Shown: piece after piece, positions 3,835 to 64,000 of the stretch
How the letters are laid out: every line of letters begins with the position of its first letter
Numbering within the stretch: the first letter of the stretch is position 1
IMG/VR virus record: IMGVR_UViG_3300035182_002586
Coordinates: 248,001-312,000 of that record
Length of the DNA: 64,000 bases
Reading direction: 5' to 3' (one strand)
Notes under the pieces: generated by a model
The model's database searches: none
Seen by the model: the letters and a program-made list of their open reading frames with translations, nothing else
What the model was told of the DNA's origin: nothing
Translations under genes and position numbers: made by a program

Positions 3835-6800
3835 TCACGTTGCCGACCTGTAAGTGATCGTGAAGTCACCCAGGGTGATGAACTCGACCATCGCCGCAGA
3901 GATGTCGTGGGCGCCCTTGTCCCCGTTGATGACGTAGCTAGCTGCGTACGCGTGGTTCCCGGGGTTGTCCGGGGGAAGCCCCGCACCCGACATGGAGACG
4001 ATGATGTGGTTTGCGGTCCGCTGGAGAAGAGCAGCGGCTCGGGTCTCCGGGGTCGTGTACCCCGCCGCGATCAGCGTCGCGTCGTCCGTGTATCCTGCGA
4101 TCACGGCACCCGTCGCACCGATGATGAACGCCTGCTTCGGTGCGAAGGCCACCTGGGAGAGCGTCGAGGCGAGCGCCATGCTCACGTCATCCTGGAAGAC
4201 CCCCTTATGCTGAGTCTTCGTCCCGCCCCCGTCCGTGGTCGGGTACTGGAGGGGGTTCGTCAGGATGTACGCGACGTTGGCTCCGATCGCGAGGGTCGGG
4301 AGGGCCAAGTAGGTGGAGAGGATCGACTCCCGTAGCTTGCGCGATCCGTTGGCGTAGGCCGTCTTGGCGTACGGCACAGGGGAGTAGTCCACGCCTGTCG
4401 TCGAGTCGATCACCCTGATGATGTCCGACTGCGCGATCCCCTGGCCGATCGTCTTGCTGTCCAGCTCGTTGCTCAGCCCCGTACGAACGGCCGGGTCCAC
4501 CTTGTCCTTAGTCGACCCCTTGAGGAGCTGGATGGTCGTCTCGATGTCGATGGGGTTCTCGACCGCCTGCTTCACGAGGACATCTGCCGTCACGTGTCGA
4601 CGGACGTTGACCGTCTGTTGCAACTCCAGGAGGAGGTCGTTGACGACGTATGTGACCGTGAAGTTCTCGTCGTGCACGTAGTCGACCGAGACCTGCTGCC
4701 CGTTCGAGATGGTGGACGCTGCGGTGCGCACGATCTTCACGGGGGTCGTTGCTGTACCGACGATGATGTCGAAGTCCGGGCTGACGGCGCTCGGCCCTGA
4801 GTACTCGATCGTGCGCGCCTGGTTGAAGACGCGAATCGTCTCGGTGTTGATGCCGATCGAGAGAAGGGGCTCCTGCACGAACCCTACAAGGACGTGGGCT
4901 TCGTCGTTGACGGTGAGGGTGTTCCCGCTCGGGACGCCGCTGACCTGGTTGATCGAGAGGTAGTCCTGAGCGATCGTGCTTTCACCCGTGAGAAGAGGGT
5001 CGTCTGTCTTGTAGAGGTCATAGCCGAGCGTGGTGTCGAGCGGCCCGGAGACCTCCCCGACGACAGAGACGACACGGCGGACCGGCTGGAGCGTGAACCG
5101 GAACTGGTTGATGACGCGGAAGCGGTAGTCCGCGATGATCACGTCATCGATGTGGGTGACCGGCTGCGCGATCGCGGTGTTGATCTTGAACGTCTGATAG
5201 TCGAGGATCGTCACGCCCGTGAGGTCGTACGTGAGACCCGTCGTGGCGTTGCGGACCCCAAGACCCTGCGCGGGGTTGTTGAGGACCTCGACGATGGGGG
5301 TCGTGGGCGTGACGCGTGAGTCGAGGACGCGGAAGACGAGGTTGGTCAGGTCGATGATCGCACACTGGATGTCACGTGCGATCTCGAAGGTGAACGCGAA
5401 GGTGTCCGAGACCTGGCGCTCTCGGAGGCCCTGCACCCAGATGTCGACTTTGCCCCCAATATGCTTGCCTCGAACGGGGTCGTAGTCCCGCATCATGAGG
5501 GGGTCGCCGCTCTTGACGACCTTGGCCTTGATGATGCCGATTTCCTCGGCTGCGGTGGCTGCGTAGCCGCCTTCCGTACCCGTGTCGACAGAGGAGTAGG
5601 CGAGCTGTGCGCGCGTCGCGAGGTCTGCGTTCGACTCTCGGTCCGTGCCGAAGACCGTCGACTCCGTGTTCGTGACCGACACCCCGGAGACCCCGGTGAT
5701 GTTCTTGATGGTCCCTGCGGATCGGTTCCCCGTGGAGCCAGTGTTCTCGGCCACGATGTCTACGATCAGCTCGTAGCGTTTGGTGTCGAAGTTGTAGAAG
5801 GCCGATGCGTTCGCAGCGGGCAGCGTGTACGAACCACCGATGCGGAAGCGAACGGAGGACAGGTTGTTCGTGGGGTCCGAGTCGGTCGACACGAACGACC
5901 CCGCCGGCACTACGATGTCCTGCGTGGGCTTGGCGTTCGTGTAAACCACTGCCTGACCCACGGCGGGGCGACCGGGGAGGCGCTTCTTGTTCTCGTTGGC
6001 CGCGAGCTTGTCGAACTGCTGATCGATGAGGTTCTGCACCGAGGCATCGTCAGGGAGGCCGAGAGCTGCCTTAAGGGCCTGCTTGTAGGCGCTGCTGGCG
6101 ACGGCATCCGACACACCCGTGCCGTTCACGTCGTCAACCTGGATCAGCGTCAAGAAGCTCTGCGAGCGGTGCACGAAGTCGACGATGAACCAGATGCGCT
6201 CGGCCTCTGAGGCGAAGGGGTCGATCGACACATCACGGGTCGTGGACCCAGGGATGAGCGCGATACTGCTGTTGACCTGCTGCACCTGCGTCAGGTAGTC
6301 GAGCGTGACCTGAAACTGCGTGCGTCCGGGCAGGTCCCGGATCGTGGTGTCGATGACGAGAGGGGCACCGAGGACTTCCTGCGAGTAGGAGGTCTCGATC
6401 TCCTTGTTGTTCGTCTTGTCGTAGTAGACGCCGGTGACGACGTAGTAGAGGGGCTGCGTGTCGTCCACGCCCGTGAACTGGTCGGAGTTCGTGATCCCTG
6501 CACCACCCGCGCGGTTGTGGCGGAAGTACACGTACTGGTCGAGCCGGTAGTTCTCCAGGGTGCTGGAGAACCGGAGGTTGTCGGTGAACGAACTCGTCAG
6601 GTAGACCCTGTTGAGACGCTCGTTGAGGACGTTGTTGAACGCGTCCTCCTCCGTCACCTTGACGCGCACGTAGGTGTAGGTCGGGTCCGTCCACGAGGTC
6701 TGATCCGAGAAGGTCGTGAAGACTGTCTCGCTGAACAAGGTCGTGGAGAGCACGGGCCTCTCATTGACCTTGAAGTACCCGGTCGAGCCACCGGGTGACG

Positions 6801-7296
6801 ATGAGGCGTAGAAGTTGAACCCCAAGAAGTCCAGGGTCAGGGGGATGACCGTTGCGACGTTGCCGAGGAAGGACACCGTGGGTACGGGCACGGCCGCGAG
6901 GATGTCCACCGTGTCCCGGCGGCGACGCACGCTCACGCCCGTAGGGATCGTAGCACCCGTGTCTGAGAGGATGCTGACTCTCGTGATCACGGCCGTGGAT
7001 GTGGCGCTCACGCCCCCCACGATGTCGATCGTTCGGATGGCGATGGTGTTGACGCCGAAGTCGAGGAGCAGCCCTGACGGGTAGGAGGCCGGGTTCGGGA
7101 TCGTGAACGTCAGCAGGTCCAGAAGAACGAGTGTCGGATCCGAAACGAAGGCAGCCCCGTTGATCGACACCTGGATCGCAGCCGTGTCTACTCCGACCGT
7201 ACCGGTCAGAACCACAGCCTCCTGGTTCGTGGTGAACACCAGGTTCGTAGTGAACCCGGTTCCGTCCCTGAGTGCGATCTGAGGAGCCGATGCCAT
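3835..7296 (-). CDS. Baseplate wedge J/gp6-like protein
   Basis: Central segment VPAGSFVST...AENTGSTGN..AGTI..ITGVSGVSVTN...GTDRESNADL...GTEGGY matches the Baseplate_J pattern; 1153 aa. Confidence 0.8.
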   Translation of the reverse strand: MASAPQIALRDGTGFTTNLVFTTNQEAVVLTGTVGVDTAAIQVSINGAAFVSDPTLVLLDLLTFTIPNPASYPSGLLLDFGVNTIAIRTIDIVGGVSATSTAVITRVSILSDTGATIPTGVSVRRRRDTVDILAAVPVPTVSFLGNVATVIPLTLDFLGFNFYASSSPGGSTGYFKVNERPVLSTTLFSETVFTTFSDQTSWTDPTYTYVRVKVTEEDAFNNVLNERLNRVYLTSSFTDNLRFSSTLENYRLDQYVYFRHNRAGGAGITNSDQFTGVDDTQPLYYVVTGVYYDKTNNKEIETSYSQEVLGAPLVIDTTIRDLPGRTQFQVTLDYLTQVQQVNSSIALIPGSTTRDVSIDPFASEAERIWFIVDFVHRSQSFLTLIQVDDVNGTGVSDAVASSAYKQALKAALGLPDDASVQNLIDQQFDKLAANENKKRLPGRPAVGQAVVYTNAKPTQDIVVPAGSFVSTDSDPTNNLSSVRFRIGGSYTLPAANASAFYNFDTKRYELIVDIVAENTGSTGNRSAGTIKNITGVSGVSVTNTESTVFGTDRESNADLATRAQLAYSSVDTGTEGGYAATAAEEIGIIKAKVVKSGDPLMMRDYDPVRGKHIGGKVDIWVQGLRERQVSDTFAFTFEIARDIQCAIIDLTNLVFRVLDSRVTPTTPIVEVLNNPAQGLGVRNATTGLTYDLTGVTILDYQTFKINTAIAQPVTHIDDVIIADYRFRVINQFRFTLQPVRRVVSVVGEVSGPLDTTLGYDLYKTDDPLLTGESTIAQDYLSINQVSGVPSGNTLTVNDEAHVLVGFVQEPLLSIGINTETIRVFNQARTIEYSGPSAVSPDFDIIVGTATTPVKIVRTAASTISNGQQVSVDYVHDENFTVTYVVNDLLLELQQTVNVRRHVTADVLVKQAVENPIDIETTIQLLKGSTKDKVDPAVRTGLSNELDSKTIGQGIAQSDIIRVIDSTTGVDYSPVPYAKTAYANGSRKLRESILSTYLALPTLAIGANVAYILTNPLQYPTTDGGGTKTQHKGVFQDDVSMALASTLSQVAFAPKQAFIIGATGAVIAGYTDDATLIAAGYTTPETRAAALLQRTANHIIVSMSGAGLPPDNPGNHAYAASYVINGDKGAHDISAAMVEFITLGDFTITYRSAT

Positions 7297-24910: not shown

Positions 24911-26809
24911 TCAGACCCCTACAGCAACTTCGGTGGCGGTCACAGGTAGTTCAGGGGGAGGAGGTGGAACCTTCTCGGCCCCCACATCGGTGACGGTCTT
25001 GGGGATGGCGGAAGAGGACTCGTTGAGGATGGGGTTGGGGGGCACGAAGGGCGGCGCCCCGAAGGTGAGGGCGGGATCGCTCACGTTGTCGAGGAGGAAC
25101 CACGCTCGGACCGTGAACGAGAACGAGTACTCCAGCGTGAACGGGCCCGTGTCGGCCTCGTTGATGCTGAGATTGTCGAAGCTCCCGATGTACAGGATGT
25201 TGTCGTAGTAGATGTAGATCGACCCCACGACAGAGAGCGTGGGAGCGCCCGTCTTCCCGACGATGCCCTCGTTGTTCAGCCACACGCCCCCGTTGTTCTT
25301 GTAGAGCAGGTAGAGGGACAGGAAGTTCTGGTAGCTGTCCGACATGTTGCGGCCCGTGCGGGTGAGCCCCCCACCGCCGGTGCTCATGCTGACTGCGTAG
25401 AAGCCGGCGAGCTTGCCGGACCCTTCGATCTTGTCCTGTTGTTCGCCCCAGTGCTCGATGATGGGTCCGTTACGGCCATAGTTGCCGTCGGAGATGATCT
25501 TCTCCCCGCTCACCTTGAAGCTCGTGGGGTTCACCAGGAGACGGAGAGGCGGCGTCTTCGCCATCTTGTCCAGCTCTCGCTGCGTCGCCTTGATCATCGC
25601 CTCCTGCGCAGCCTGGAAGCTCGTTCCGAGGTCGGTGAGGTTCAGGTCCTTGTTGGAGGTCTTCTCGATCGTCTTCTTCGCCGTGCTGGCGTCACCCGAC
25701 CCGCTCGGCTTCCAGTCCCCCGTCGTTGCTCCGCCAGTGGGGCCCGCACCAGGGTTGAGGGTGCCGTCGGCACCGCCCTTCAAGGCCGCCTCACCTTGCG
25801 CAATGCCGGCAGTGATCCAGTCAGGAAGGGGTTTGTTTGCGTACTCGGCCACCTGGTCGACGTTGATGGCTCCGATAGGCTCTTGGATGACCTTGCCCGT
25901 GGCGTCCTTCTTGGGTACGTCGAAGCCGGGGTTCTGCTGGTAAGCCAGGTCTTGGAAGTCCGCCCGTGGGAACTTGAACCCCGGGTGGTCCTCGATGTAC
26001 TTCTTCTGGTACGCCGCGCTGGCGTACAGGATCCCGGGGGGATTACCGGAGTTCTGGAAGCCCCCGAAATTACGGAGGTAGGCTTCCGTGGCGGTCATAC
26101 CCTTGACGCCACCCTTCGCGAAGAACTTTTCGGCCCAATAGAGCTGGTTGTCGGCCGAGGTGTTCTCGTAGTTCTTCCAGTCCTCTTCCGACATGCCGAT
26201 GCTCTTCGCGGGATCGAGCATCAACTGGTTGAGGCCCTTGGCCACGGGCACAGGGGGGTTACCCTGCTTGTTCACGGCCGTGGTCTTGAAGCCGCTCTCA
26301 CCCTTGATGACGGCAGCGAGGACCTTGGGGTCCACACCAAGGCGCTTACACATCGCCACATACTTCGTCCAGAAGTCCGGTGGTAGGGCTCCGTTGGGCA
26401 GACCCGCTCCACCACTGGTGTTCCCCTTGATGTTCAGCTCGTCGGCGAAGCCTGTGATCGAGGCTACGCTGGCCGAACGATCGAGGTGGCGTCCCGTGAC
26501 GTTGGAAGACGGGGGTAGCACCCCGATGATGAAGGGCTTGGCGTCCTTGTGGTACGCGTCTGACTGAGAGAACCCCACGAAGTCGGAGGTTGCGGGGTCG
26601 TCCTCCGTCCGGAGCCGGCTGTACTGCGTGAGGAGGTTGTAGACCTGCGGGGCGTAGGTGTCCGCCGTGTTCTCGATTTGCTGGTAGACGCGCTGCTCAG
26701 GGGAGGTGGGGGACGCCGTGGTGATGCCACCCGCAGGCACTCCTCCGGTCTCCGTGAGAACGGTGGGGGACGCGCTAGGGTCGACTCCGGTGCTTGTATT
26801 GAGTGCCAC
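24911..26809 (-). CDS. Tail-associated lytic transglycosylase fused to tube-initiator-like domain
   Basis: SLT motif VLAAVIKGESGF...AKGLNQL; the C-terminal LLVNPTSF...EHWGEQ domain is paralogous to the 26819-27550 protein. Confidence 0.7.
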   Translation of the reverse strand: MALNTSTGVDPSASPTVLTETGGVPAGGITTASPTSPEQRVYQQIENTADTYAPQVYNLLTQYSRLRTEDDPATSDFVGFSQSDAYHKDAKPFIIGVLPPSSNVTGRHLDRSASVASITGFADELNIKGNTSGGAGLPNGALPPDFWTKYVAMCKRLGVDPKVLAAVIKGESGFKTTAVNKQGNPPVPVAKGLNQLMLDPAKSIGMSEEDWKNYENTSADNQLYWAEKFFAKGGVKGMTATEAYLRNFGGFQNSGNPPGILYASAAYQKKYIEDHPGFKFPRADFQDLAYQQNPGFDVPKKDATGKVIQEPIGAINVDQVAEYANKPLPDWITAGIAQGEAALKGGADGTLNPGAGPTGGATTGDWKPSGSGDASTAKKTIEKTSNKDLNLTDLGTSFQAAQEAMIKATQRELDKMAKTPPLRLLVNPTSFKVSGEKIISDGNYGRNGPIIEHWGEQQDKIEGSGKLAGFYAVSMSTGGGGLTRTGRNMSDSYQNFLSLYLLYKNNGGVWLNNEGIVGKTGAPTLSVVGSIYIYYDNILYIGSFDNLSINEADTGPFTLEYSFSFTVRAWFLLDNVSDPALTFGAPPFVPPNPILNESSSAIPKTVTDVGAEKVPPPPPELPVTATEVAVGV

Positions 26810-37998: not shown

Positions 37999-39696
37999 AT
38001 GGAAGCAACCAAGAAATCCCGTCGTCCCCGATGGTCGGTCGTTCTAGGTACCGTCGCGGGAGTGGTCGCCGTTGCTCTTGTCGTGGCCTGGTTCGTCGCA
38101 CCTGTGATGGTGCGACGCTACGTGGAGCAGCACTACAAGGGGGTCCACATCCAAGGCGGGGTGACCCTATCGTTCCGTGGTGTCGCACTCCACGGGGTCG
38201 AGATCGACAGGGAGGGGGTCAAAGCACAGCTACCCCTCGTGCGTGTGCTCCCGGATGAGAGCGTCGTCGTAGAGGGCGGGACGGCTACCCTCACCCTGAC
38301 GGAAAAGCCAGGGGGCGGTAACAGCGACACGAAGAGACGGGTCGTGGGGTGGTTGGATGCGGCCACGGTCGTGCAGGGGGACGTCAAGGGGACTGCCACG
38401 AAGGTCACGTTCGACGACTTTCGCGTCTGCGCCGAGAAGGTGGAGGCGCAGCACCCAAAGGGTTCGGTGTCTGGTGCCACCGTCTGCGTGAGGAAAGACC
38501 GCACGCTCGTCACGGCCGAGGCGCTGACGGCCACACCGAGCTTCAAGCTCCCCTACATCGACAAGCTGCCGGCCCCGACCCCCAAGGACATCACCGTCAC
38601 TGGCGTCGAGTTCAAACCGAAAGAGCCGAGCGTATCGGTCAAGACGGCCACCTTTGGGCCGGTGTCGGTCAAGTCCGGGTACGCAGCGATCAAGTCCGCG
38701 ACCGTGTATCTCATGGGGGACGTGACTCTGGACCTGGCGGTTCTGCACACGGGGCCGATCACGTTGAAGGACGTGAGCACCAAGATCCCTGTGGCGGATC
38801 TGGCGAACCTGACGAAGATCCCGGTTCAGATCGGCCCCGCTCGGGTGGTGATCAGCCCGGGGGACATGTCCCTCGAAGGGGATGCGAAGTGCCAGGCGTG
38901 GGTCGATGCGTTGCCCACGGAGCTGCGTACGGGCCCCCTTGCCACGATGCGCCTGGAGGGGTCCTTGTCCTTCACAGTCGCCGTGAAGCCCCCCACGCCC
39001 ACGTTCAAGATGAAGGCGGACTGCCACGCCTCGTGTGAGGGGTTCAAGCCTCTGTCGGGGAAGTTCACCTACACGGCCTACGATGCTGACGGAAAGGAGT
39101 TCGTGCGCACGACGGGTCCGGGCACGAAGGACTGGACCCCGATCGGCGAAGTGAGCGCCACGCTTCCGGCCGCCGTGATGTCGACGGAAGACCCCGGGTT
39201 CCTCGGGCACAAGGGGGTCATCCCCGAGGCCATCGAGAACTCGCTGCGGGACGACCTCAAGGCCGACCGCTTCGTGCGCGGGGGCTCCACCATCACGATG
39301 CAGCTCGTGAAGAACGTCTGGCTCCGACGGACCAAGACGCTTGGACGCAAGACCCAAGAGGTCCTGCTGTCGCTCGCGATCGAGTCGTGTCTGTCGAAAG
39401 ACGTGATCATGGAGACGTACCTGAACGTCGTCGAGTTCGGCCCCAATCTCTACGGGGTGGGGCCCGCGTCGCAGCACTACTTCGGAGAAGCTGCGATGAC
39501 TCTCGACCCTGTGCGGTCGTACTACCTGGCTTCGATCCTCCCCGCCCCTCGAAAGGCTCCGCCCCCGAACACCGAGACCTTGGAGCGCATTCGCTCGCTG
39601 ATGATCCGTGTGTCGAAAGAGAGTGGACAGCTCTCGGACACGTTCGGAGCACCTAGCCCTCAGGACGAAGAGGGGTGGGTCGTCAACAAGCCGTAG
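37999..39696 (+). CDS. Membrane-anchored peptidoglycan glycosyltransferase (GT51, monofunctional)
   Basis: N-terminal basic stretch plus TM helix; C-terminal EDPGFLGHKG, RGGSTITMQLVKN, RKTQE and YLNVVEFG GT51 motifs; no transpeptidase domain. Confidence 0.9.
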   Translation: MEATKKSRRPRWSVVLGTVAGVVAVALVVAWFVAPVMVRRYVEQHYKGVHIQGGVTLSFRGVALHGVEIDREGVKAQLPLVRVLPDESVVVEGGTATLTLTEKPGGGNSDTKRRVVGWLDAATVVQGDVKGTATKVTFDDFRVCAEKVEAQHPKGSVSGATVCVRKDRTLVTAEALTATPSFKLPYIDKLPAPTPKDITVTGVEFKPKEPSVSVKTATFGPVSVKSGYAAIKSATVYLMGDVTLDLAVLHTGPITLKDVSTKIPVADLANLTKIPVQIGPARVVISPGDMSLEGDAKCQAWVDALPTELRTGPLATMRLEGSLSFTVAVKPPTPTFKMKADCHASCEGFKPLSGKFTYTAYDADGKEFVRTTGPGTKDWTPIGEVSATLPAAVMSTEDPGFLGHKGVIPEAIENSLRDDLKADRFVRGGSTITMQLVKNVWLRRTKTLGRKTQEVLLSLAIESCLSKDVIMETYLNVVEFGPNLYGVGPASQHYFGEAAMTLDPVRSYYLASILPAPRKAPPPNTETLERIRSLMIRVSKESGQLSDTFGAPSPQDEEGWVVNKP

Positions 39697-40662: not shown

Positions 40663-41049
40663 ATGTCGAACGTCAACACGGATCAGATCGCAGAACAGCT
40701 CGGCCAGCTCTCCGTCATGGAGCTGATTGGCCTCACAAAGAAGCTGGAGACCGCCTGGGGCGTTTCGGCGGCGCCTGCCGTCAACCTGGCCCCGCCGACC
40801 CCGTTGCCGGGCACCCCGGTCGTCGCAGAGCAGACGGAGTTCGAGGTCGCCCTCACGGGCCTCGCCGCCCCGGACAAGAAGATCTCGGTCATCAAGGTCA
40901 TCCGGGAAGTCACGGGCCTCGGCCTCAAGGAGGCGAAGGACCTCGTGGAAGCCCTCCCGAAGACCGTGAAGGAAGGCATCGCGAAGGCGGAGGCGGAAGA
41001 CCTCACGAAGAAGCTGCGTGAGGCCGGCGCCACGGTCGAGATGAAGTGA
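40663..41049 (+). CDS. rplL: 50S ribosomal protein L7/L12 (full length)
   Basis: [25 protein letters not shown] and [34 protein letters not shown]...AE.L.KKL.EAGA.VE.K; GGAGG SD. Confidence 0.97.
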
Positions 41050-41069
41050 TCGCTCCCTCGGGGCGTGTC

Positions 41070-41076
41070 CGGTGTA
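41070..41076 (+). promoter_or_regulatory. CGGTGTA candidate promoter for pyrB
   Basis: CCGGTGTACCGGCGCGCCCCGATG; no SD. Confidence 0.45.
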
Positions 41077-41089
41077 CCGGCGCGCCCCG

Positions 41090-42043
41090 ATGACGGACAT
41101 CAAACACGCAGTCTCCATCGACCAGTTCGACAACCCCTCGATCGAGAGGTTGTTCCTACGAGCCAGGACTCTTCGGGACGCCGACGTGCAGGCGAGCAGC
41201 CTCGCGGGCAAGGTCCTCGCCTGCCTCTTCTACGAGCCCTCGACCCGCACCTCGTCCAGCTTCATCGCTGCGATGACTCGGGCCGGGGGCTCGGTCATTC
41301 CGATCACTCAAGGGGTGCAGTTCTCCAGCGTCTCGAAGGGCGAGACGCTGGAAGACACGATCGTCACCCTCGGTCAGTACGCCGATGCGATCGTTCTTCG
41401 TCACCCGGAGGTGGGCGCAGCCGCACGGGCGGCCGCTGTCTCCCCGGTCCCGGTCATCAACGCCGGAGACGGTGCCGGAGAACACCCGACGCAGGCGCTC
41501 CTGGACCTCTTCACAATCCAAGAGGAGTGTGGCGGCCGCCTCGACGAGCTGAACGTGACGTTCGTGGGCGACCTTGCGCACGGCCGTACGGTGCACTCGC
41601 TGGCGAAGCTCCTCGCACGGCACAACACGAAGATCAACCTCGTCTCCCCCTTCCTTCTCCGCCTCAACCGGATCGGGGATGACGACCCTACCTACCGGGC
41701 CGTCAAGCATCGGATCGGACGGGAGCGCACCGTCAAGAACGGGCTCCACGAGGCGCAGGACATCCTGAACGATTCGGATGTCATCTACATGACGAGGGTG
41801 CAGAGGGAGCGCTTCACGTACGCGGAAGGGTACGCGGAGGTGAAGGACTCCTGCCTGCTCACGGACGAGATCGTCGCGGGGCTGAAACCTCGTGCGCGCA
41901 TCCTCCACCCGTTCCCGCGCGTGAACGAGATCCCGACCACCATCGACAAGGACCCTCGCGCGGCCTACTTCCGGCAGATTCGCAACGGGCTGTGGGTCCG
42001 GATGGCCCTTCTCGAAAGCGTCATCCTCGGGAGGACGCCGTGA
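41090..42043 (+). CDS. pyrB: Aspartate carbamoyltransferase catalytic subunit
   Basis: FYEPSTRT carbamoyl-phosphate site, SSVSKGETLEDT, NAGDG..EHPTQALLD, VGDL.HGRTVHSL, YMTRVQRER and LHPFPRVNEI. Confidence 0.95.
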   Translation: MTDIKHAVSIDQFDNPSIERLFLRARTLRDADVQASSLAGKVLACLFYEPSTRTSSSFIAAMTRAGGSVIPITQGVQFSSVSKGETLEDTIVTLGQYADAIVLRHPEVGAAARAAAVSPVPVINAGDGAGEHPTQALLDLFTIQEECGGRLDELNVTFVGDLAHGRTVHSLAKLLARHNTKINLVSPFLLRLNRIGDDDPTYRAVKHRIGRERTVKNGLHEAQDILNDSDVIYMTRVQRERFTYAEGYAEVKDSCLLTDEIVAGLKPRARILHPFPRVNEIPTTIDKDPRAAYFRQIRNGLWVRMALLESVILGRTP

Positions 42044-42074
42044 TCGTCGGCATCCTCGGTCTCGCAGGCTTTGG

Positions 42075-42089
42075 TAGTCTGGTTATAGG
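42075..42089 (+). promoter_or_regulatory. Candidate TA-N7-TAT promoter (TAGTCTGGTTATAGG)
   Basis: 11 nt upstream of ATG 42101. Confidence 0.4.
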
Positions 42090-42100
42090 ACGTCCTGAGT

Positions 42101-42931
42101 ATGGCGCTCACGAGTCACATCTACGCCCTCGTTCACCCTATATCTGGTGAGATCCGCTACGTTGGGAAGTGTGTGACGTCGCTCAAGAGACGACTTCACA
42201 ACCACGAGTACCGAGCACGTAGTGGTCGCGACAAAACCCCCAAAGGGGAGTGGATCCGGCAGCTACACCTGAGGGGGTTACACCCCCTCACCCGGCCACT
42301 CGAAGTAACCACAGAGCTTCGATGGCAGGACGCCGAACGACGGTGGATCGCCAAACTACGAGCAGAGGGACACCCGCTTCTGAACTTGCACGCTGGCGGC
42401 AACGGGGCTCACACACGTGCTGCCCTCGCCCCGCAGTATGCAAGCCTTCTCGGAACGATCTCCGACGCTCGAATCGCGGAAATGGCTGGATTGTGTCGAG
42501 AGACGGTAACGTACCACAGAAGAAGGGCTGGTATCCACGCCTCCAACGATCGCAGTCGGGTCAAGTGCACCTTCCAGAAGGGGGCACCCCCTCCTAACAA
42601 GATCGAGATCCCGTCTGCCCTGCTCGGTCAACTGGGAAAGCTGAGTGACGGGGAACTGGCCAAAACCTGCGGTGTGTCGCGAGGGCTGATTAAGCAGCGC
42701 AGAAAGAAAGCCGGGATCGCCCCTGCTCTCCCGAAAGGCAAAACGCCACATGGGACAGACCACCCCAACGCAAAGTTGACTGAGGAAGTCGTCCGTCAGA
42801 TTCGAGCAAGATACAAGCGATACAGCCGGACAGATGGGTGTGGAGTGATGGCCAAGGAACTGGGGATCGATCGCTCCACCGTGCACGACGTGGTGACGGG
42901 TAAGATATGGAGGGTAAGATATGGAGGGTAA
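42101..42931 (+). CDS. GIY-YIG homing endonuclease with repeated HTH modules
   Basis: HIYALVHP..GEIRYVGK motif; two LLG..SD..IA...G HTH repeats; C-terminal HPNAKLTEE.VR.IR. Confidence 0.85.
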   Translation: MALTSHIYALVHPISGEIRYVGKCVTSLKRRLHNHEYRARSGRDKTPKGEWIRQLHLRGLHPLTRPLEVTTELRWQDAERRWIAKLRAEGHPLLNLHAGGNGAHTRAALAPQYASLLGTISDARIAEMAGLCRETVTYHRRRAGIHASNDRSRVKCTFQKGAPPPNKIEIPSALLGQLGKLSDGELAKTCGVSRGLIKQRRKKAGIAPALPKGKTPHGTDHPNAKLTEEVVRQIRARYKRYSRTDGCGVMAKELGIDRSTVHDVVTGKIWRVRYGG

Positions 42932-42944
42932 GATATGGAGGGTA
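42898..42944 (+). repeat. 3 x 14-bp tandem repeat GGGTAAGATATGGA
   Basis: Units at 42898, 42912 and 42926, plus a partial GGGTA. Confidence 0.95.
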
Positions 42945-42949
42945 GTAGG

Positions 42950-43720
42950 ATGCTTCTAGGTATCAGCGGGTTAGCGAACAGCGGCAAGGACACGGTGGCG
43001 AAGTTCCTCGGGGAAGACCTCCGGTTCGTTGGCATCGCGTTCGCTGATCCCCTCAAGCAGATCGCGAAGACGGTCTACCGCTTCACGGACGACCAGCTCT
43101 GGGGGCCGTCCCACATGCGCAACACCCCCGACAAGCGCTACCCTCGGTCTCACACCTGGGTCCTGGCCGATCGGCTCGCCGAGCACGAGATGACGTGCGC
43201 CTGCTGTGGGGCTGGAGCCAACCGCCGACTCGTCGAAGACGACCTGCTCGTGGTCAATGAGGAAGACGTCTCCCCGTGCTACCTCACGCCGAGGTATGCC
43301 CTCCAGCTTCTCGGCACGGAGTGGGGGCGGCAGTGCTACCCCGACACGTGGGCGCTCCTTGGCGTCACCAACGCCAAGGAGCTGCTCGGGCCCAACGGAG
43401 CTGGACTTCGTTACGACAGGGCGCGTGGCATCTGGCGCTCGGACCGGCACCCGACGGAGAAGGCGGCAGGCGTCGCGATCACGGACGTGCGCTTCAAGAA
43501 CGAGATGAGGGTCATCCGTGAAGGCGGCGGGAAGGTCATCCGCGTTCGTCGACCCGGGGCTGGACTTGGGGGCGGGGCCGGGCTCCACCCCTCAGAGGCA
43601 GAGCAGGCGAGCATCCCGGATTCGGCGTTCGACGCGATCATCGAGAACGACGAGACCCTCGACGTTCTGCGTGCGCGGTCGCACGACACCCTGGTGAGCC
43701 TCGGGGCCACGGGTTACTGA
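42950..43720 (+). CDS. Deoxynucleoside monophosphate kinase
   Basis: LLGISGLANSGKDT P-loop, FADPLKQ, TPRYALQLLGTEWGR, ITDVRFKNE and HPSE are the phage dNMP kinase pattern. Confidence 0.9.
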   Translation: MLLGISGLANSGKDTVAKFLGEDLRFVGIAFADPLKQIAKTVYRFTDDQLWGPSHMRNTPDKRYPRSHTWVLADRLAEHEMTCACCGAGANRRLVEDDLLVVNEEDVSPCYLTPRYALQLLGTEWGRQCYPDTWALLGVTNAKELLGPNGAGLRYDRARGIWRSDRHPTEKAAGVAITDVRFKNEMRVIREGGGKVIRVRRPGAGLGGGAGLHPSEAEQASIPDSAFDAIIENDETLDVLRARSHDTLVSLGATGY

Positions 43721-44559
43721 CCCACGGCGGCTCGGCCAGCTTGAAGCAGTTGCGCTGAGATCGCAGGATCGAACGAAACTGGGTTCACGTACGTCATCGA
43801 TGCGGGGGCGAAGACTCGGATACGAGGGGCCTGCCTACCCTTGAACTCCTGCTTCGTCCACGCGTCGATGTCCCCTTCCATCACCCCATCGAGAGCATAG
43901 ATCAGGGCTGCAACAGCGATGGTGGTCAACGTGAGTGCCCGCTTCGGGGGCACCACCATCCAGTCCCCGAGGCCACGCGGAAAGCAGAGGATGATGTCGA
44001 TCTCGTCGGCACCCTCTGCAACGGCCACAGACACAGGGTCGTTGCGTCGGATACCCCCATCAACGTAAGAGGCCCCGTCGATCTCTACGGGCGGGAATAC
44101 GAGCGGGATCGCCGCAGAGGCGAGCACCCACTTGGCGAACGAGGCGTCTTCGCTGCTGCTCGTGTGGACCCGGCCGCTTTGCAGCTCCACCGCGCTCACG
44201 ATGCACTTTGTGTGGAAGGTCGAGCTGCCGGTGATGTACCGCTCGACCAGGTGGCGCAGCGGGGTGGTGCTTCGGAACGAAGGCTTGGCTCGAAGCCAGG
44301 GGACGATCCCGGCAAGGGCTCCGAACCAATTCGCACGATGTACGTGACGGGTGTGGAGTTGTGACCAAAGGGCAACGAGTTCGGCCGCCCGGGCCCTCTG
44401 TTCGTCCTTCGGTGCACACGCAAGGAAGGCTCCGTTGAGGGCACCTACACTGGTGCCAACGACGAGATCCCACGTCGCCCCTTGTTCAGCAAGCCCTTGG
44501 ATAGCGCCTGCCTGGAAGGCTCCGAGAGACCCGCCGCCGCTGAGGACGAGGGCTCGCAT
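43714..44559 (-). CDS. Patatin-like phospholipase
   Basis: LSGGGSLGAFQAG glycine loop, GTSVG nucleophile elbow and VDGG catalytic Asp. Confidence 0.92.
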   Translation of the reverse strand: MRALVLSGGGSLGAFQAGAIQGLAEQGATWDLVVGTSVGALNGAFLACAPKDEQRARAAELVALWSQLHTRHVHRANWFGALAGIVPWLRAKPSFRSTTPLRHLVERYITGSSTFHTKCIVSAVELQSGRVHTSSSEDASFAKWVLASAAIPLVFPPVEIDGASYVDGGIRRNDPVSVAVAEGADEIDIILCFPRGLGDWMVVPPKRALTLTTIAVAALIYALDGVMEGDIDAWTKQEFKGRQAPRIRVFAPASMTYVNPVSFDPAISAQLLQAGRAAVGQ

Positions 44560-44620: not shown

Positions 44621-45418
44621 ATGACCTGGCTCCTCGGACTCGATGCCGCTCGTTGGCAAGGCAAGCTCAAGGGAAACGCACTCGACGGGTGTGTGGTGAA
44701 AGACAACGCCGGCAAGGTCGTCGGCCCCGTCAAGTTCGCGTACTTCAAGGCCACCCACGGCACCGGCGGCGTCGACGAGCAGTTCGTCTGGAACGCTACG
44801 TCGAGCGCGCCGATGAAGCGTCGCGGCTTCTACATGTGGCTCGTCCCGACGCAGGACCCTCTCAAGCAGGCGGATCACTTCTGCGATGTGGTCAGCGAGT
44901 TCGATCGTCCGACGGACCTCCCTCCGGCGATCGACTTCGAGGACGACGGGAATGGCCGTGTTCGAGGGAAAGCGCTTCTCGACATCGCACGCGCTTGTGT
45001 GATGCGTGTGGAAGAGCGCCTCGGTCTGCGCCGGTCGGTTCTCTACACGGGCAAGTGGTTCTGGCAGCAGGCGTGTGCGGACATCGACGACGACTTCTTC
45101 GCGAAGCGTCCCCTCTGGCACGCGCAGTACCCCGGACACGTGGTGAGCGAAGGCGAGAAGCCCGCCATCGCAAAGCCTTGGGCGTCACGGAACATCGCCG
45201 AGACGTTCTGGCAGTTCGACGGGGACAAGGGCCTCTTCCTCCCTGGTGAGGCAACGGCTCTCGGCAAGCCTGTCGATGCCGACTTCAACCGCTTCATGGG
45301 CAGCGAGGAAGACCTCGACACCTTCACGATGTGGGCCCGGACGCCCTCCGTGGCAGCTTGCCCGCCGGACCCGGATGCGATGGCAGACGATTGGCGCAAG
45401 CCTCCCCCCGCAGTCTGA
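44621..45418 (+). CDS. GH25 muramidase (probable endolysin)
   Basis: GLDAARWQG, FAYFKATHG, LPPAIDFE (DxE), LYTG, LWHAQY, FWQF and VDADFN are GH25 motifs. Confidence 0.88.
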   Translation: MTWLLGLDAARWQGKLKGNALDGCVVKDNAGKVVGPVKFAYFKATHGTGGVDEQFVWNATSSAPMKRRGFYMWLVPTQDPLKQADHFCDVVSEFDRPTDLPPAIDFEDDGNGRVRGKALLDIARACVMRVEERLGLRRSVLYTGKWFWQQACADIDDDFFAKRPLWHAQYPGHVVSEGEKPAIAKPWASRNIAETFWQFDGDKGLFLPGEATALGKPVDADFNRFMGSEEDLDTFTMWARTPSVAACPPDPDAMADDWRKPPPAV

Positions 45419-45489: not shown

Positions 45490-45993
45490 TCAGTTCCGCT
45501 TCTTCTTCCCCTCGGGGGCCTTGGCCTTCACGGGCTCTGCCTCCGGGGCGGCTTCGACGACGGGCTCTGCCTCCGCCGGTGCGGGCTCCTCCGCCGGTGC
45601 GGGCTCGGGAGCGGGTTCCTCCGCCTTCACGGGCTCGGGAGCGGGTTCCTCCGCCTTCACGGGCTCGGGAGCGGGCTCGGGAGCGGGCTCGGGAGCGGGC
45701 TCGGGAGCGGGCTCGGGAGCGGGCTCGGGCTCGGGCTTGGGGGCAGGGGCCTTCACGGGCTCGGGAGCGGGCTTGGGGGCACGGGGTGCTGCCTTCGGTG
45801 CAGCCCGTAGCGCTTCCGCCTGTGCGATGAGCGCGAGGAGCCCGTCGATCGACACATCGATCATCCCCGAGGCACCCACCTCCGAGGCGAGCTGCTTCGC
45901 GTACTCCTTTGCGTGGCCGACCTGAAAGCCGTGGGTACGAGCGTACAGGCAGCGAGCCTTGAGTGCAGCGAGTTCGTGGCTGTCCATCGACAT
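45490..45993 (-). CDS. Pro/Glu/Ala-rich (PEPA repeat) protein
   Basis: GAGGAG SD; short helical N-terminus, (PEPA)n linker and basic KKKRN C-terminus. Confidence 0.7.
   Translation of the reverse strand: MSMDSHELAALKARCLYARTHGFQVGHAKEYAKQLASEVGASGMIDVSIDGLLALIAQAEALRAAPKAAPRAPKPAPEPVKAPAPKPEPEPAPEPAPEPAPEPAPEPAPEPVKAEEPAPEPVKAEEPAPEPAPAEEPAPAEAEPVVEAAPEAEPVKAKAPEGKKKRN
45545..45775 (-). repeat. 12-bp coding repeat (gcgggctcggga; PEPA) and longer AEEPAPEP duplications
   Basis: Directly visible tandem units. Confidence 0.9.
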
Positions 45994-60894: not shown

Positions 60895-60896
60895 AC

Positions 60897-63103: not shown

Positions 63104-64000
63104 CTAGCGGTGCTCTCCGATCGCGTCCGGTCTGATCGCCCGGTTCCACGGCATGAGCGTCGGGTAGCAGACCCTTGCCAGCTCAGCCATCTCCCAGGCG
63201 ACGCGGCGATACGAGATGTGGCCCTGCGGCTGCGTGCGCAGCTCGGTGATGTAGTACAGCTCACGCATGTCCATCTGGAAGATGGACCGGTGAAGGTAGC
63301 CGAGCGGTACGGCGTACTGGACGATCGAGGAGGACACGCCAGACGAGATCATCGTCCGGCACGCAGTGCCCACTTCGTCCATCGCCGAGCGGTAGGGGGC
63401 CTCGAACTCCGTGCCTTTGAGGTCGTCCGGCACGAGGTAGCCGTAGTCCGTCCCGAGGGGTTCGACGTACTGCTCGCACCGTCTGTGGCGCTGGAGGTCG
63501 CGGAAGGCGCCATAGTCCATCATCACGTCGAACGTGATCGGGACCGTCTTGAAGATCTCCGGGACCGGGTGCTTGCCCCGCGTCTCCATGAGTGCTCCGA
63601 ACGCCCCCCGGTCGAGCCCGTGCCAGTCGGAGACCCTCTGCCAGAAGCGCGTCTCGTGGCGGAACGCGTCGTCTGCGGTCATGGGGTCCTCGATGGTGAC
63701 CCGCCACTCGCTGCTCTTCGTACGGGGGACTCGACCCCTGCCGAGGTCTCGGATCGGGGGCTCGAACGTGTTCGCCTTCGCCCCCATCGCGAAGACCGGA
63801 GCGAACTTCGAGGCTGCCGCCACCATGCGCTCGCCGATGGCCCTCAGCTCGGGGTTCGAGCTACCGAGGAGGTCAGACATGACGTAGCGGGCATCGCGCG
63901 CGTTGAACACGCCTGCGAGGTTCGTCCCCGTGCCTGCGGGCAGCAGATAGCGGAGGTTGTCGAAGGCGCGGGCCTTGACCGAGGGCTTCTTCATCAGCTC
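63104..64000 (-). CDS. thyX: FAD-dependent thymidylate synthase (ThyX/Thy1-type), 5'-truncated by window edge
   Basis: FRDLQRHR ThyX-type motif and RELYYITELRTQPQGHISYR; the reading frame stays open to the window end. Confidence 0.75.
   Translation of the reverse strand, partial: ELMKKPSVKARAFDNLRYLLPAGTGTNLAGVFNARDARYVMSDLLGSSNPELRAIGERMVAAASKFAPVFAMGAKANTFEPPIRDLGRGRVPRTKSSEWRVTIEDPMTADDAFRHETRFWQRVSDWHGLDRGAFGALMETRGKHPVPEIFKTVPITFDVMMDYGAFRDLQRHRRCEQYVEPLGTDYGYLVPDDLKGTEFEAPYRSAMDEVGTACRTMISSGVSSSIVQYAVPLGYLHRSIFQMDMRELYYITELRTQPQGHISYRRVAWEMAELARVCYPTLMPWNRAIRPDAIGEHR

What the first reader, a model, noticed from the sequence alone, without database searches (positions are those of the whole stretch)
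41090..43720. De novo pyrimidine gene pyrB in a phage, near a dNMP kinase and alongside ThyX
pyrB catalyses the committed step of de novo pyrimidine synthesis and has all the catalytic motifs here. No regulatory (PyrI) or dihydroorotase (PyrC/PyrC') partner is adjacent, so it may act as an unregulated catalytic trimer that bypasses CTP/UTP feedback, or titrate the host complex. With the dNMP kinase (42950) and thyX (63104) it outlines phage control from the start to the end of dTTP/dCTP supply. ATCase is not a commonly cited phage auxiliary metabolic gene.
Basis: partly seen in the sequence, partly recalled or inferred. Interest (0 to 1): 0.7.

Follow-up and report, generated by a model that had tools for sequence, protein, structure and literature searches.

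The report
Huge-phage aspartate carbamoyltransferase gene
A half-megabase phage carries an intact copy of the enzyme that commits cells to making pyrimidines, an old, vertically inherited gene of one huge-phage lineage that probably boosts nucleotide supply during infection; it is a fresh example of a known kind of phage "metabolic helper" gene.

Summary
Window 41090-42043(+) encodes a complete aspartate carbamoyltransferase (ATCase) catalytic chain, above NCBI's pyrB equivalog cut-off, with every substrate-binding residue in place. Window 42935/42950-43720(+) encodes a T4-gp1-like dNMP kinase. The genome is a 529-kb IMG/VR viral record (620-kb parent contig) with tail and baseplate genes, an endolysin, 53 tRNAs and a tmRNA.

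The interpretation needs correcting in five places.
- A type-II dihydroorotase (pyrC) sits 266 kb upstream in the same genome.
- Lacking PyrI is not a phage adaptation: the nearest cellular relatives (Chloroflexota) lack it too.
- The phage does not control the pathway from start to end. I found no carB, pyrD, pyrE, pyrF, CTP synthase, ribonucleotide reductase, dCMP deaminase or dUTPase.
- At least 200 IMG/VR contigs encode relatives. The window's enzyme falls in a well-supported clade found only on large, phage-like contigs. In 15 of 16 large viral records ATCase is the only pyr gene among those tested.
- The ORF between pyrB and the kinase is a mobile GIY-YIG homing endonuclease, absent in a sister strain. 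There the kinase start appears to overlap the pyrB stop.

Best reading: a working, PyrI-less catalytic trimer that raises flux through the committed pyrimidine step. It is a new member of a known kind.

The parts
40663..41049 (+). Ribosomal protein L7/L12 homologue, directly upstream of pyrB on the same strand (40-nt gap)
   Evidence: TIGR00855 at 142.6 bits (cut-off 84.4) and Pfam Ribosomal_L12 plus L12_N. The same neighbour is present in three assemblies.
41090..42043 (+). pyrB, the aspartate carbamoyltransferase catalytic chain, 317 aa (an alternative GTG start at 41072 adds 6 aa)
   Evidence: TIGR00670 at 302.9 bits, above the 236.95 cut-off. Pfam OTCace_N and OTCace. Best solved relative is the human CAD ATCase domain 5G1N at 4.4e-80, aligned over residues 5-315. 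All substrate-binding residues are conserved. 9 of the 12 listed differences to a sister strain are synonymous.
42040..42068 (+). Remnant of the original 5' end of the dNMP kinase gene. Its GTG overlaps the pyrB TGA stop (GTGA).
   Evidence: The sequence reads VIVGILGLAG. In run X4, contigs join 42068 to 42983/42986 with 4 or 7 letters between. That gives an in-frame P-loop N-terminus, VIVGILGLAGSGKDT.
42101..42931 (+). Free-standing GIY-YIG-type homing endonuclease (276 aa: nuclease domain plus helix-turn-helix modules), a mobile insertion
   Evidence: Pfam GIY-YIG on residues 1-110: E 4.4e-4, 20.9 bits, just under the 22.6 cut-off. Weak helix-turn-helix hits and phrog_59/664. The ORF is absent from sister-strain contigs in X4. 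Its GC3 is 0.635 against 0.83-0.89 in the flanking genes.
42899..42940 (+). Three tandem copies of a 14-nt unit (GGTAAGATATGGAG) at the junction of the endonuclease 3' end and the kinase start. Each copy carries GGAG and ATG.
   Evidence: Read directly from the sequence.
42935..43720 (+). dNMP kinase (T4 gp1-like). The likely start is ATG 42950, 7-12 nt after a GGAGG. Its first ~16 codons are a lower-GC replacement of the remnant at 42040-42068.
   Evidence: phrog_139 at 1.1e-37 and Pfam PF21448 at 42.4 bits, above 27.1. 11 of the 13 listed differences to the sister strain are synonymous.
63104..64000 (-). 3' part of a divergent ThyX-family gene with two ThyX-like stretches. The full ORF is 448 aa and runs to G000:312,450.
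   Evidence: Pfam Thy1 at 72.5 bits. The full ORF scores 53 bits on TIGR02170 with two matched stretches, below the 87.9 cut-off.
3835..7296 (-). Baseplate wedge protein, part of a tail and baseplate module spanning about 3.8-33 kb. It shows that this segment is viral.
   Evidence: phrog_6 at 2.5e-24. phrog_694 (hub and tail lysozyme) matches 19404-21581, and tail-fibre families match 24911-26809. A GH25 endolysin lies at 44621-45418.

Best explanation
The gene encodes a working aspartate carbamoyltransferase that the phage expresses in the infected cell, most likely as a bare catalytic homotrimer with no PyrI and no obligatory dihydroorotase partner.

It would take host carbamoyl phosphate and aspartate and add capacity at the committed step of UMP synthesis. 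That pulls carbamoyl phosphate towards pyrimidines. In this genome a phage type-II dihydroorotase then carries the product one step further. Every other step is left to the host: CPSase, pyrD, pyrE, pyrF, nucleotide kinases and ribonucleotide reductase.

pyrB is co-expressed with a dNMP kinase. In the ancestral arrangement the kinase start codon overlaps the pyrB stop; here a homing endonuclease has inserted between them.

**Shown:** gene identity, intact catalytic residues, viral context, clade-level inheritance, a mostly synonymous pattern of differences between strains, and absence of the other pathway genes.
**Inferred:** enzymatic activity, trimeric state, expression timing, the flux benefit and the regulatory behaviour.
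For: - **Identity and active site:**
- **Viral context:** the same L12-pyrB-endonuclease-kinase order appears in three assemblies. Tail and baseplate genes and an endolysin flank the region. The genome has 53 tRNAs and a tmRNA. It is an IMG/VR record with a CheckV completeness of 100%.
- **Old phage gene, not a fresh capture:** the window's ATCase lies in a clade of 15 sequences with SH-aLRT 99. All of them come from contigs over 190 kb or from unplaced metagenome contigs. Two are genomes with direct terminal repeats, of 380 and 435 kb. The nearest named cellular sequences, from Chloroflexota, are only 50-57% identical, against 60-68% within the clade.
- **Selection:** 9 of 12 listed differences in pyrB, 11 of 13 in the kinase, and 23 of 29 in pyrC (third codon positions) are silent or third-position changes relative to a strain roughly 90-95% alike.
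- **ATCase as the only pyr gene is the rule:** across 16 large viral records that encode ATCase, PyrI, carB and pyrF were found in 0, pyrD in 1 and Amidohydro_1 in 1.
- **Link to the dNMP kinase:**
- **Established knowledge:** ATCase active sites are shared between adjacent chains of a trimer, through S80 and K84. Catalytic trimers are active without PyrI, as shown by the E. coli c3 subunit, B. subtilis and plant ATCases (PMC7878868).
Against: - There is no expression evidence. No RNA run was listed.
- Nothing tests activity or oligomeric state.
- The 529-kb record lacks ribonucleotide reductase and the remaining pyr genes, so any benefit depends wholly on host enzymes that may themselves be limiting.
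- About 81 kb of the 620-kb parent contig could not be searched.
- The host is unknown. L7/L12 homologues are uninformative.
- 'Unregulated' is not established. The CP-loop Phe equals Arabidopsis F161, which is required for UMP inhibition.
Confidence: 0.72

Rival explanations
1. The enzyme is active but feedback-regulated within its single chain, as in plants. UMP would bind in the active site and be stabilised by the CP-loop Phe (F78 here). The phage copy would then add regulated capacity rather than bypass feedback.
For: The CP-loop reads FSSVSKGE, against plant FSSAAKGE, with the same spacing as in the plant and human enzymes. F161A abolishes UMP inhibition in Arabidopsis ATCase, and its authors attribute UMP sensitivity to a few changes in this loop (PMC7878868). 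F or Y at this position is conserved across the phage clade and its bacterial relatives.
Against: Plant A164 and A165, which contact UMP, are V and S here. Plant E156 and E160 are not conserved. The Phe is a trait of the whole bacterial and viral subfamily, for which no UMP inhibition has been reported in anything I read. Overall the enzyme is slightly closer to human CAD ATCase, which has Thr at this position.
Confidence: 0.2
2. The gene is not viral: it is a host gene on a chimeric contig, or a host flank of a provirus. IMG/VR labels the record 'provirus'.
For: IMG/VR and CheckV class the record as a provirus and trimmed 90.6 kb from the 620-kb contig. No Terminase_6N match was found in the record.
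Against: pyrB lies 289 kb inside the record, between a baseplate and tail module and an endolysin. The same gene order appears in three separate assemblies, and identical or near-identical sequence in four metagenomes. Its closest relatives are on complete huge-phage genomes with direct terminal repeats. The 9 kb beyond the trimmed boundary looks phage-like: Endonuclease VII and many small ORFs with no Pfam match. In cellular relatives pyrB sits in a pyr operon; here it does not.
Confidence: 0.03
3. The protein acts as a decoy that titrates a host regulatory or partner subunit (PyrI, or an inactive dihydroorotase-like PyrC') rather than as an enzyme.
For: It lacks the roughly 25-residue N-terminal extension conserved in its nearest cellular homologues. 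In Thermanaerothrix the cellular pyrB follows a dihydroorotase-like gene.
Against: All catalytic residues are invariant across the phage clade, and differences between strains are mostly synonymous. The nearest cellular lineages have no PyrI to titrate.
Confidence: 0.03
4. The main benefit is draining carbamoyl phosphate or aspartate away from host arginine and other pathways (host shut-down), or making N-carbamoyl-aspartate for some other purpose. Pyrimidine supply would be secondary.
For: ATCase is the only pyr gene found in 15 of 16 large viral records that have it. No ribonucleotide reductase is present to follow the product through to dNTPs.
Against: This genome also keeps the next enzyme, pyrC, with mostly third-position differences between strains. 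pyrB is repeatedly linked to a dNMP kinase. Both point to nucleotide supply.
Confidence: 0.05

Closest known systems
ATCase domain of human CAD (PDB 5G1N) and fungal CAD ATCase (5NNN)
   Same: It is the best solved-structure match: 4.4e-80, aligned end to end. It shares STRTS instead of STRTR, the same CP-loop length, and the PRAAYFRQ C-terminal motif.
   Different: The phage protein is free-standing rather than a domain of a CPSase-DHOase-ATCase polyprotein. It has Phe where CAD has Thr in the CP-loop, and about 10 extra residues in the aspartate domain.
Arabidopsis PyrB, a UMP-inhibited homotrimer (PDB 6YPO; PMC7878868)
   Same: It is a stand-alone trimer type with no regulatory chain. The match is 5.4e-76. 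The CP-loop FSSxxKGETLEDT carries the Phe equivalent to F161.
   Different: A164 and A165 are V and S here. There is no transit peptide. UMP sensitivity is untested.
E. coli / Salmonella PyrBI holoenzyme (class B, c6r6)
   Same: All PALA-contacting residues are conserved. The match is about 3.5e-64, with 42% identity to Salmonella pyrB by tblastn.
   Different: No PyrI is present in the phage, in 15 other large ATCase-encoding viral records, or in 5 Chloroflexota genomes with the nearest cellular ATCases.
Chloroflexota pyr-operon ATCases (for example Thermanaerothrix daxensis)
   Same: They are the nearest named cellular relatives, at 50-57% identity, with an identical or near-identical CP-loop (ITQGVQFSSVSKGE in some members).
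   Different: The cellular genes sit in an operon: a dihydroorotase-like gene, pyrB, a pyrF-pyrE fusion, then pyrD. They carry a conserved N-terminal extension of about 25 residues. The phage clade has neither.
Phage nucleotide-metabolism auxiliary genes: cyanophage 'pyrBI', and huge-phage purine and pyrimidine genes (PMC10436341; Al-Shayeb et al. 2020, PMC7162821)
   Same: It is the same category: a virus-encoded step of de novo pyrimidine synthesis with no functional study. Another published huge phage, LR756511.1 (595 kb), also encodes an ATCase.
   Different: This one belongs to a distinct huge-phage clade. The LR756511 enzyme is only 37% identical and sits on a very long branch. This genome also pairs it with pyrC and a translationally coupled dNMP kinase.
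Bacillus subtilis class C ATCase (an unregulated trimer, PDB 2AT2/3R7D)
   Same: It is the functional model for a PyrI-less, partner-less catalytic trimer.
   Different: It is much more distant in sequence: 1.7e-37 against about e-80 for the CAD and plant types.

Membership tests
Aspartate carbamoyltransferase catalytic chain (PyrB, EC 2.1.3.2) | Two-domain architecture: a carbamoyl-phosphate domain plus an aspartate domain | tested here: met
   Pfam OTCace_N covers residues 11-151 and OTCace covers 159-316, both over their full profile length.
Aspartate carbamoyltransferase catalytic chain (PyrB, EC 2.1.3.2) | Scores above the curated equivalog cut-off and better than the ornithine or putrescine carbamoyltransferase models | tested here: met
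   TIGR00670 scores 302.9 bits against a cut-off of 236.95. The best OTCase model scores 122 bits against a cut-off of 306.
Aspartate carbamoyltransferase catalytic chain (PyrB, EC 2.1.3.2) | Carbamoyl-phosphate site residues S52-T53-R54-T55, R105, H134, Q137 (E. coli numbering) | tested here: met
   All are identical in the alignment to Salmonella PyrB and invariant in 27 clade and relative sequences.
Aspartate carbamoyltransferase catalytic chain (PyrB, EC 2.1.3.2) | Aspartate site residues R167, R229, Q231, and the H-P-x-P-R motif | tested here: met
   R166, R236, Q238 and HPFPR are present. L267 is Phe here and Leu in most clade members; that contact is made through the backbone.
Aspartate carbamoyltransferase catalytic chain (PyrB, EC 2.1.3.2) | Shared active sites in a homotrimer, with S80 and K84 donated by the neighbouring chain | tested here: inconclusive
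   S79 and K83 are conserved. Assembly into a trimer was not modelled or measured.
Aspartate carbamoyltransferase catalytic chain (PyrB, EC 2.1.3.2) | Catalyses carbamoyl phosphate + L-aspartate to N-carbamoyl-L-aspartate | not testable with these tools
   This needs an enzyme assay or complementation.
Class B ATCase holoenzyme (PyrB6-PyrI6, regulated by CTP, UTP and ATP) | A PyrI regulatory chain is encoded | tested here: not met
   PF01948 found no match in the 529-kb record, while the control detected it in 7 genomes. It was found in 0 of 16 large viral records and 0 of 5 Chloroflexota genomes.
Class A ATCase-dihydroorotase dodecamer | A type-I dihydroorotase or inactive PyrC' partner, usually adjacent | tested here: not met
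   The only amidohydrolase found is a type-II dihydroorotase (TIGR00856 at 359.5 bits; TIGR00857 at only 37.8 bits). It lies 266 kb away.
Plant-type UMP-inhibited ATCase | CP-loop Phe (F161) with the FSSAAK context | tested here: inconclusive
   F78 and both Ser residues match, with the same loop length, but A164 and A165 are V and S. UMP binding itself cannot be tested here.
Phage auxiliary metabolic gene | A cell-type metabolic gene inside a viral genome, flanked by viral genes, intact and under purifying selection | tested here: met
Free-standing GIY-YIG homing endonuclease (ORF 42101-42931) | A GIY-YIG nuclease domain, DNA-binding modules, and presence/absence polymorphism at a conserved gene junction | tested here: met
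   GIY-YIG: E 4.4e-4, 20.9 bits, just under the cut-off. Weak helix-turn-helix hits. A precise absence of about 915 bp in X4 contigs. Deviant GC3. Cleavage activity was not tested.
T4 gp1-like dNMP kinase (ORF 42935/42950-43720) | DNMK family match plus an N-terminal P-loop | tested here: met
   PF21448 at 42.4 bits, above 27.1. phrog_139 at 1.1e-37. The P-loop GLANSGKDT is present.

The most novel reading that the evidence does not exclude
Huge phages of this lineage keep a minimal ATCase as their one conserved foothold in de novo pyrimidine synthesis. This enzyme, together with its Chloroflexota-type bacterial subfamily, would use the single-chain UMP feedback and sequential-firing mechanism so far described as exclusive to plants, mediated by the CP-loop Phe. 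The phage would then plug in a self-regulating committed step rather than an unregulated one, and the 'plant-only' mechanism would be widespread in bacteria and viruses.
Probability: 0.15. Interest if true: 0.55.

Novelty: new member of a known kind. Interest (0 to 1): 0.38.

Why it matters
Nucleotide supply limits phage replication. A 0.5-0.6 Mb genome needs over a million nucleotides per virion, more than recycling host DNA can provide for a sizeable burst.

One huge-phage lineage has kept the committed-step enzyme over long evolutionary time, usually as its only pyr gene. This points to ATCase, and the partition of carbamoyl phosphate, as the step worth owning.

The enzyme is also a compact, PyrI-less ATCase that should be easy to express. 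It could be used to test whether the plant-type CP-loop mechanism exists outside plants.

This is an incremental addition to the known catalogue of phage auxiliary metabolic genes, not a new principle.

Tried and rejected
- **Megablast of the region against 50,697 phage records:** no match. In the tblastn search, most 'phage' records with ATCase were mislabelled bacterial contigs (Salmonella, Listeria, Staphylococcus). Only LR756511.1 was a credible huge phage.
- **Expression:** no RNA run was listed for the region or for pyrB alone, so expression is untested.
- **Searching the full 620-kb JGI contig:** I could view only 9 kb beyond the trimmed boundary, so about 81 kb remains unseen and could hold further genes.
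- **Terminase_6N:** no hit in the record. I did not pursue other terminase or capsid models. The viral identity rests on the tail and baseplate genes, the endolysin, the tRNA array, IMG/VR and CheckV, and relatives with direct terminal repeats.
- **Host inference from L7/L12:** the best cellular hits are at most 60% identical and come from mixed phyla, so this was uninformative. The Chloroflexota affinity of the ATCase is too deep to name a host.
- **Promoter and terminator scan of 39.6-44.7 kb:** nothing on the + strand.
- **Not run:** a trimer or ATCase-dihydroorotase complex prediction. Homology already makes the trimer near certain, and I do not claim a PyrB-PyrC complex.
- **Rejected:** ornithine or putrescine carbamoyltransferase identity, a host-contamination origin, and the decoy hypothesis. 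Reasons are given under the rival explanations.
Full report
**1. What is at the coordinates**

The window is bases 248,001-312,000 of a single 528,957-bp contig with 63.9% G+C. The contig has 53 tRNA genes and a tmRNA clustered at 123-176 kb. IMG/VR holds it as a viral record with a CheckV completeness of 100%. It is a trimmed version of a 620,031-bp JGI metagenome contig.

The stretch 40.6-45.4 kb holds the following genes.

| Coordinates | Strand | Gene | Evidence |
|---|---|---|---|
| 40663-41049 | + | Ribosomal protein L7/L12 | TIGR00855, 142.6 bits |
| 41090-42043 | + | pyrB | see below |
| 42101-42931 | + | 276-aa ORF | see section 6 |
| 42935/42950-43720 | + | dNMP kinase | phrog_139 1.1e-37; PF21448 42.4 bits |
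| 43714-44559 | − | Patatin-like phospholipase | Pfam Patatin |
| 44621-45418 | + | GH25 endolysin | Pfam Glyco_hydro_25; phrog_291 |

These rest.

pyrB matches both carbamoyltransferase domains over their full length. It passes NCBI's aspartate carbamoyltransferase equivalog model at 302.9 bits (cut-off 236.95), while all ornithine and putrescine carbamoyltransferase models fall far below theirs.

Aligned to Salmonella PyrB, every residue known to contact the bisubstrate analogue PALA in the E. coli enzyme is present: S52, T53, R54, T55, S80, K84, R105, H134, Q137, R167, R229, Q231 and P266. The only differences near the site are R56 to Ser, as in human CAD, and L267 to Phe, a contact made through the backbone.

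**2. Is the segment viral?**

Yes, on several independent grounds.

- A tail and baseplate module lies upstream on the minus strand. It includes a baseplate wedge protein (phrog_6, 2.5e-24), a hub and tail lysozyme, and tail-fibre families. An endolysin lies 2.5 kb downstream.
- The order L12-pyrB-276 aa ORF recurs in three separately assembled contigs. Identical or near-identical sequence occurs in sediment, microbial-mat, groundwater and hot-spring metagenomes.
- IMG/VR labels the record 'provirus' because CheckV cut 90.6 kb from the left of the contig. The 9 kb I could view beyond that boundary holds an ABC ATPase, an RF-1 domain protein, an Endonuclease VII, a histone-deacetylase-family protein and about 15 small ORFs with no Pfam match. 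That looks like more phage, so the trim is probably an artefact and the true genome is nearer 620 kb.
- A Terminase_6N search found nothing. I did not pursue other hallmark models.

**3. What kind of ATCase it is**

The best solved relatives, in order:

| Structure | E-value |
|---|---|
| Human CAD ATCase domain (5G1N) | 4.4e-80 |
| Arabidopsis PyrB (6YPO) | 5.4e-76 |
| Fungal CAD ATCase (5NNN) | 5.4e-73 |
| Pyrococcus ATCase (1ML4) | 8.1e-72 |
| E. coli PyrB | about 3.5e-64 |
| B. subtilis enzyme | 1.7e-37 |

The nearest named cellular sequences among 185,579 species genomes are overwhelmingly Chloroflexota (Anaerolineae, Caldilineae, Ardenticatenia, Thermoflexus), at 50-57% identity. In Thermanaerothrix daxensis the gene sits in an operon: a dihydroorotase-like gene, pyrB, a pyrF-pyrE fusion, then pyrD. 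None of five such genomes has PyrI. The subfamily therefore lacks PyrI natively, and the absence of PyrI in the phage is inherited rather than an adaptation.

The phage enzymes do lack a roughly 25-residue N-terminal extension that the cellular homologues share. An in-frame stop just upstream of 41072 rules that extension out here.

**4. The phage clade**

The closest proteins in a 5.8-billion-protein collection are 60-66% identical. They sit on contigs of 200-660 kb packed with small unannotated ORFs. An IMG/VR scan found 200 contigs encoding relatives, and 14 of the 80 listed are 195-435 kb.

In a maximum-likelihood tree of 55 sequences rooted on Salmonella PyrB, the window's enzyme falls in a clade of 15 with SH-aLRT 99. 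The clade contains no named cellular genome. It includes genomes with direct terminal repeats of 380 and 435 kb. Branch lengths inside the clade are substantial, yet all catalytic residues are invariant. This is an old, vertically kept huge-phage gene, not a recent capture.

**5. The rest of the pathway**

The 529-kb record has no match for any of these:

- PyrI, carB, pyrD, pyrF, pyrE or an amino-acid-kinase-fold enzyme (carbamate or UMP kinase)
- CTP synthase, dCMP deaminase or dUTPase
- ribonucleotide reductase class I/II or class III

Every search detected its family in the control genomes.

The record does encode a dihydroorotase, at G000:22,041-23,066, about 266 kb upstream of pyrB. It scores 359.5 bits against TIGR00856 pyrC_dimer (cut-off 292.95), which makes it the E. 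coli-type class II enzyme. It lies among DNA methyltransferases, RNase HII and small ORFs. A sister strain roughly 90-93% alike also has it, with 23 of the 29 listed differences at third codon positions. Its nearest homologue, at 64% identity, sits next to a pyrD gene on another phage-like contig, with an L12-like gene nearby.

Across 16 large viral records that encode ATCase, the counts were:

| Gene family | Records with a match |
|---|---|
| PyrI | 0 of 16 |
| carB | 0 of 16 |
| pyrF | 0 of 16 |
| pyrD | 1 of 16 (LR756511.1) |
| Amidohydro_1 | 1 of 16 (this genome) |

ATCase as the only pyr gene among those tested is therefore the rule, and this genome adds one further step. The caveat is that about 81 kb of the parent contig was not searchable.

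**6.

I laid metagenome contigs on 40663-43720. In a groundwater run (X4), two contigs join position 42068 directly to 42983 or 42986, with only 4 or 7 letters between. The 276-aa ORF is simply absent there.

That ORF has these properties:

- a GIY-YIG nuclease domain (E 4.4e-4, 20.9 bits against a cut-off of 22.6)
- helix-turn-helix modules
- a GC3 of 0.635, against 0.83-0.89 for its neighbours

It is a mobile, free-standing homing endonuclease.

Reading the joint against the window sequence gives the endonuclease-less arrangement. The kinase would begin at a GTG overlapping the pyrB TGA stop (GTGA) and read VIVGILGLAGSGKDT, a proper P-loop. That indicates translational coupling of pyrB and the kinase. 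I could not read the X4 contig letters themselves across the stop, so this step is inferred.

In the window the old 5' end survives as a remnant at 42040-42068. A replacement 5' end with lower-GC codons, preceded by three 14-nt repeats that each carry GGAG and ATG, restores the kinase at 42935/42950.

The same gene pair recurs in a distant member of the clade. In the 435-kb genome with direct terminal repeats, a kinase 39% identical lies immediately upstream of the ATCase gene.

Listed differences between strains are mostly synonymous: 9 of 12 in pyrB and 11 of 13 in the kinase. Only the best-supported differences were shown by the tool, so these are partial counts.

**7. How it most likely works**

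The conserved active site includes the two residues donated by a neighbouring chain. By homology to trimeric ATCases that are active without any partner (the E. coli c3 subunit, B. subtilis and plant enzymes), the protein should form a catalytic homotrimer. It would convert host carbamoyl phosphate and aspartate to N-carbamoyl-aspartate.

This is the committed step, and it competes with ornithine carbamoyltransferase for carbamoyl phosphate. Extra ATCase should therefore pull flux into UMP synthesis. The phage dihydroorotase removes the product, and host enzymes do the rest.

A genome of 0.53-0.62 Mb costs more than a million nucleotides per copy, so recycling host DNA cannot sustain a large burst. 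That part is inference.

Whether the enzyme escapes feedback is open. Its CP-loop (FSSVSKGE) carries the Phe equivalent to Arabidopsis F161. Mutating F161 abolishes UMP inhibition, and the Arabidopsis authors hold that loop to be plant-exclusive (PMC7878868). An aromatic residue at this position is conserved throughout the bacterial and viral subfamily. The two Ala residues that contact UMP are V and S here.

**8. Comparison with what is known, and verdict**

Virus-encoded ATCase is already on record:

- as a low-frequency cyanophage auxiliary gene 'pyrBI' of unknown role (PMC10436341)
- in viral auxiliary-gene lists
- implicitly in the statement that many huge phages carry de novo purine and pyrimidine genes and L7/L12 (PMC7162821)

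No functional study turned up. The finding is therefore real and correctly named, but it is a new member of a known kind. The additions made here are:

- the huge-phage-specific clade
- the pattern of ATCase as the only pyr gene
- the distant pyrC
- the natively PyrI-less, CAD- and plant-like subfamily
- the homing-endonuclease insertion that split a coupled pyrB-kinase pair

I score interest as moderate, at 0.38.

Noticed in passing
window 42040-42952: A homing endonuclease inserted into the 5' end of the dNMP kinase gene. The original first ~10 codons remain as a remnant overlapping the pyrB stop. A recoded, lower-GC replacement 5' end sits behind the endonuclease. A sister strain in a groundwater metagenome lacks the insertion.
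   Followed up: yes
window 42899-42940: Three exact tandem copies of a 14-nt unit (GGTAAGATATGGAG) span the endonuclease stop and the kinase start. Each copy offers a Shine-Dalgarno-like GGAG and an ATG.
   Followed up: partly
window 40663-41049: A full-length ribosomal protein L7/L12 gene lies directly upstream of pyrB. Its homologues are at most 63% identical and come from mixed phyla, so it gives no clue to the host. An L12-like gene also lies near pyrD-pyrC on another phage-like contig.
   Followed up: partly
G000:C1:22041-23066 (= L006:1471-2496), outside the window: A type-II dihydroorotase (pyrC) lies in the same phage genome, among methyltransferases and RNase HII. It is retained in a sister strain. 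Its nearest homologue lies next to pyrD on a 73-kb phage-like contig.
   Followed up: yes
whole 529-kb record G000: I found no ribonucleotide reductase of any class, and no dUTPase, dCMP deaminase or CTP synthase. That is an unusually thin nucleotide toolkit for a half-megabase phage. About 81 kb of the parent contig went unsearched.
   Followed up: partly
G000 left boundary; L172:12764-21797 (JGI contig below position 90,622): The DNA that CheckV trimmed as 'host' looks phage-like. It has Endonuclease VII, an RF-1 domain protein, a histone-deacetylase-family protein and many small ORFs with no match. The 'provirus' label is probably an artefact and the genome is about 620 kb. The last genes inside the boundary are an ABC permease-like protein and a 598-aa protein with a C-terminal OmpA domain and ABC-transporter-like neighbours.
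   Followed up: partly
window 63104-64000(-), continuing to G000:312,450: The thyX-like gene is cut by the window end. The full ORF is 448 aa with two ThyX-like stretches. It scores well below the thyX equivalog cut-off, and its RHR motif is not followed by the usual Ser.
   Followed up: partly
G000:C1:123254-123328: ARAGORN calls a tRNA with anticodon TTA (a 'tRNA-Stop', which would read UAA) ahead of the 52-tRNA array and the tmRNA. All ORFs examined read normally under table 11.
   Followed up: no
alignment A1 and (L087-L166, L007-L083): The aromatic CP-loop residue (F or Y before SS-x-x-KGE), reported as exclusive to plant ATCases, is conserved across a large bacterial subfamily (Chloroflexota, Aminicenantes and others) and its viral relatives.
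   Followed up: partly
L135:3735-8382 (Thermanaerothrix daxensis): The cellular relatives carry an operon: a dihydroorotase-like gene, pyrB, a fused OMP decarboxylase-phosphoribosyltransferase (pyrF-pyrE in one 475-aa ORF), then pyrD.
   Followed up: no
window 37999-39696(+) and 43714-44559(-): A 565-aa protein has a C-terminal peptidoglycan glycosyltransferase (PBP-type Transgly) domain. A patatin-like phospholipase weakly resembles CBASS effector lipases. Both are unusual phage cargo flanking the pyrB cluster.
   Followed up: no
window 60124-60951(-): A carbon-nitrogen hydrolase family protein (nitrilase or N-carbamoyl-amidase superfamily) has no subfamily assignment. Any link to carbamoyl compounds is untested.
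   Followed up: no
window 45490-45993(-): A 167-aa protein has a long low-complexity tract rich in Pro, Ala and Glu (repeated APEP and EPAP units). It matches no family.
   Followed up: no
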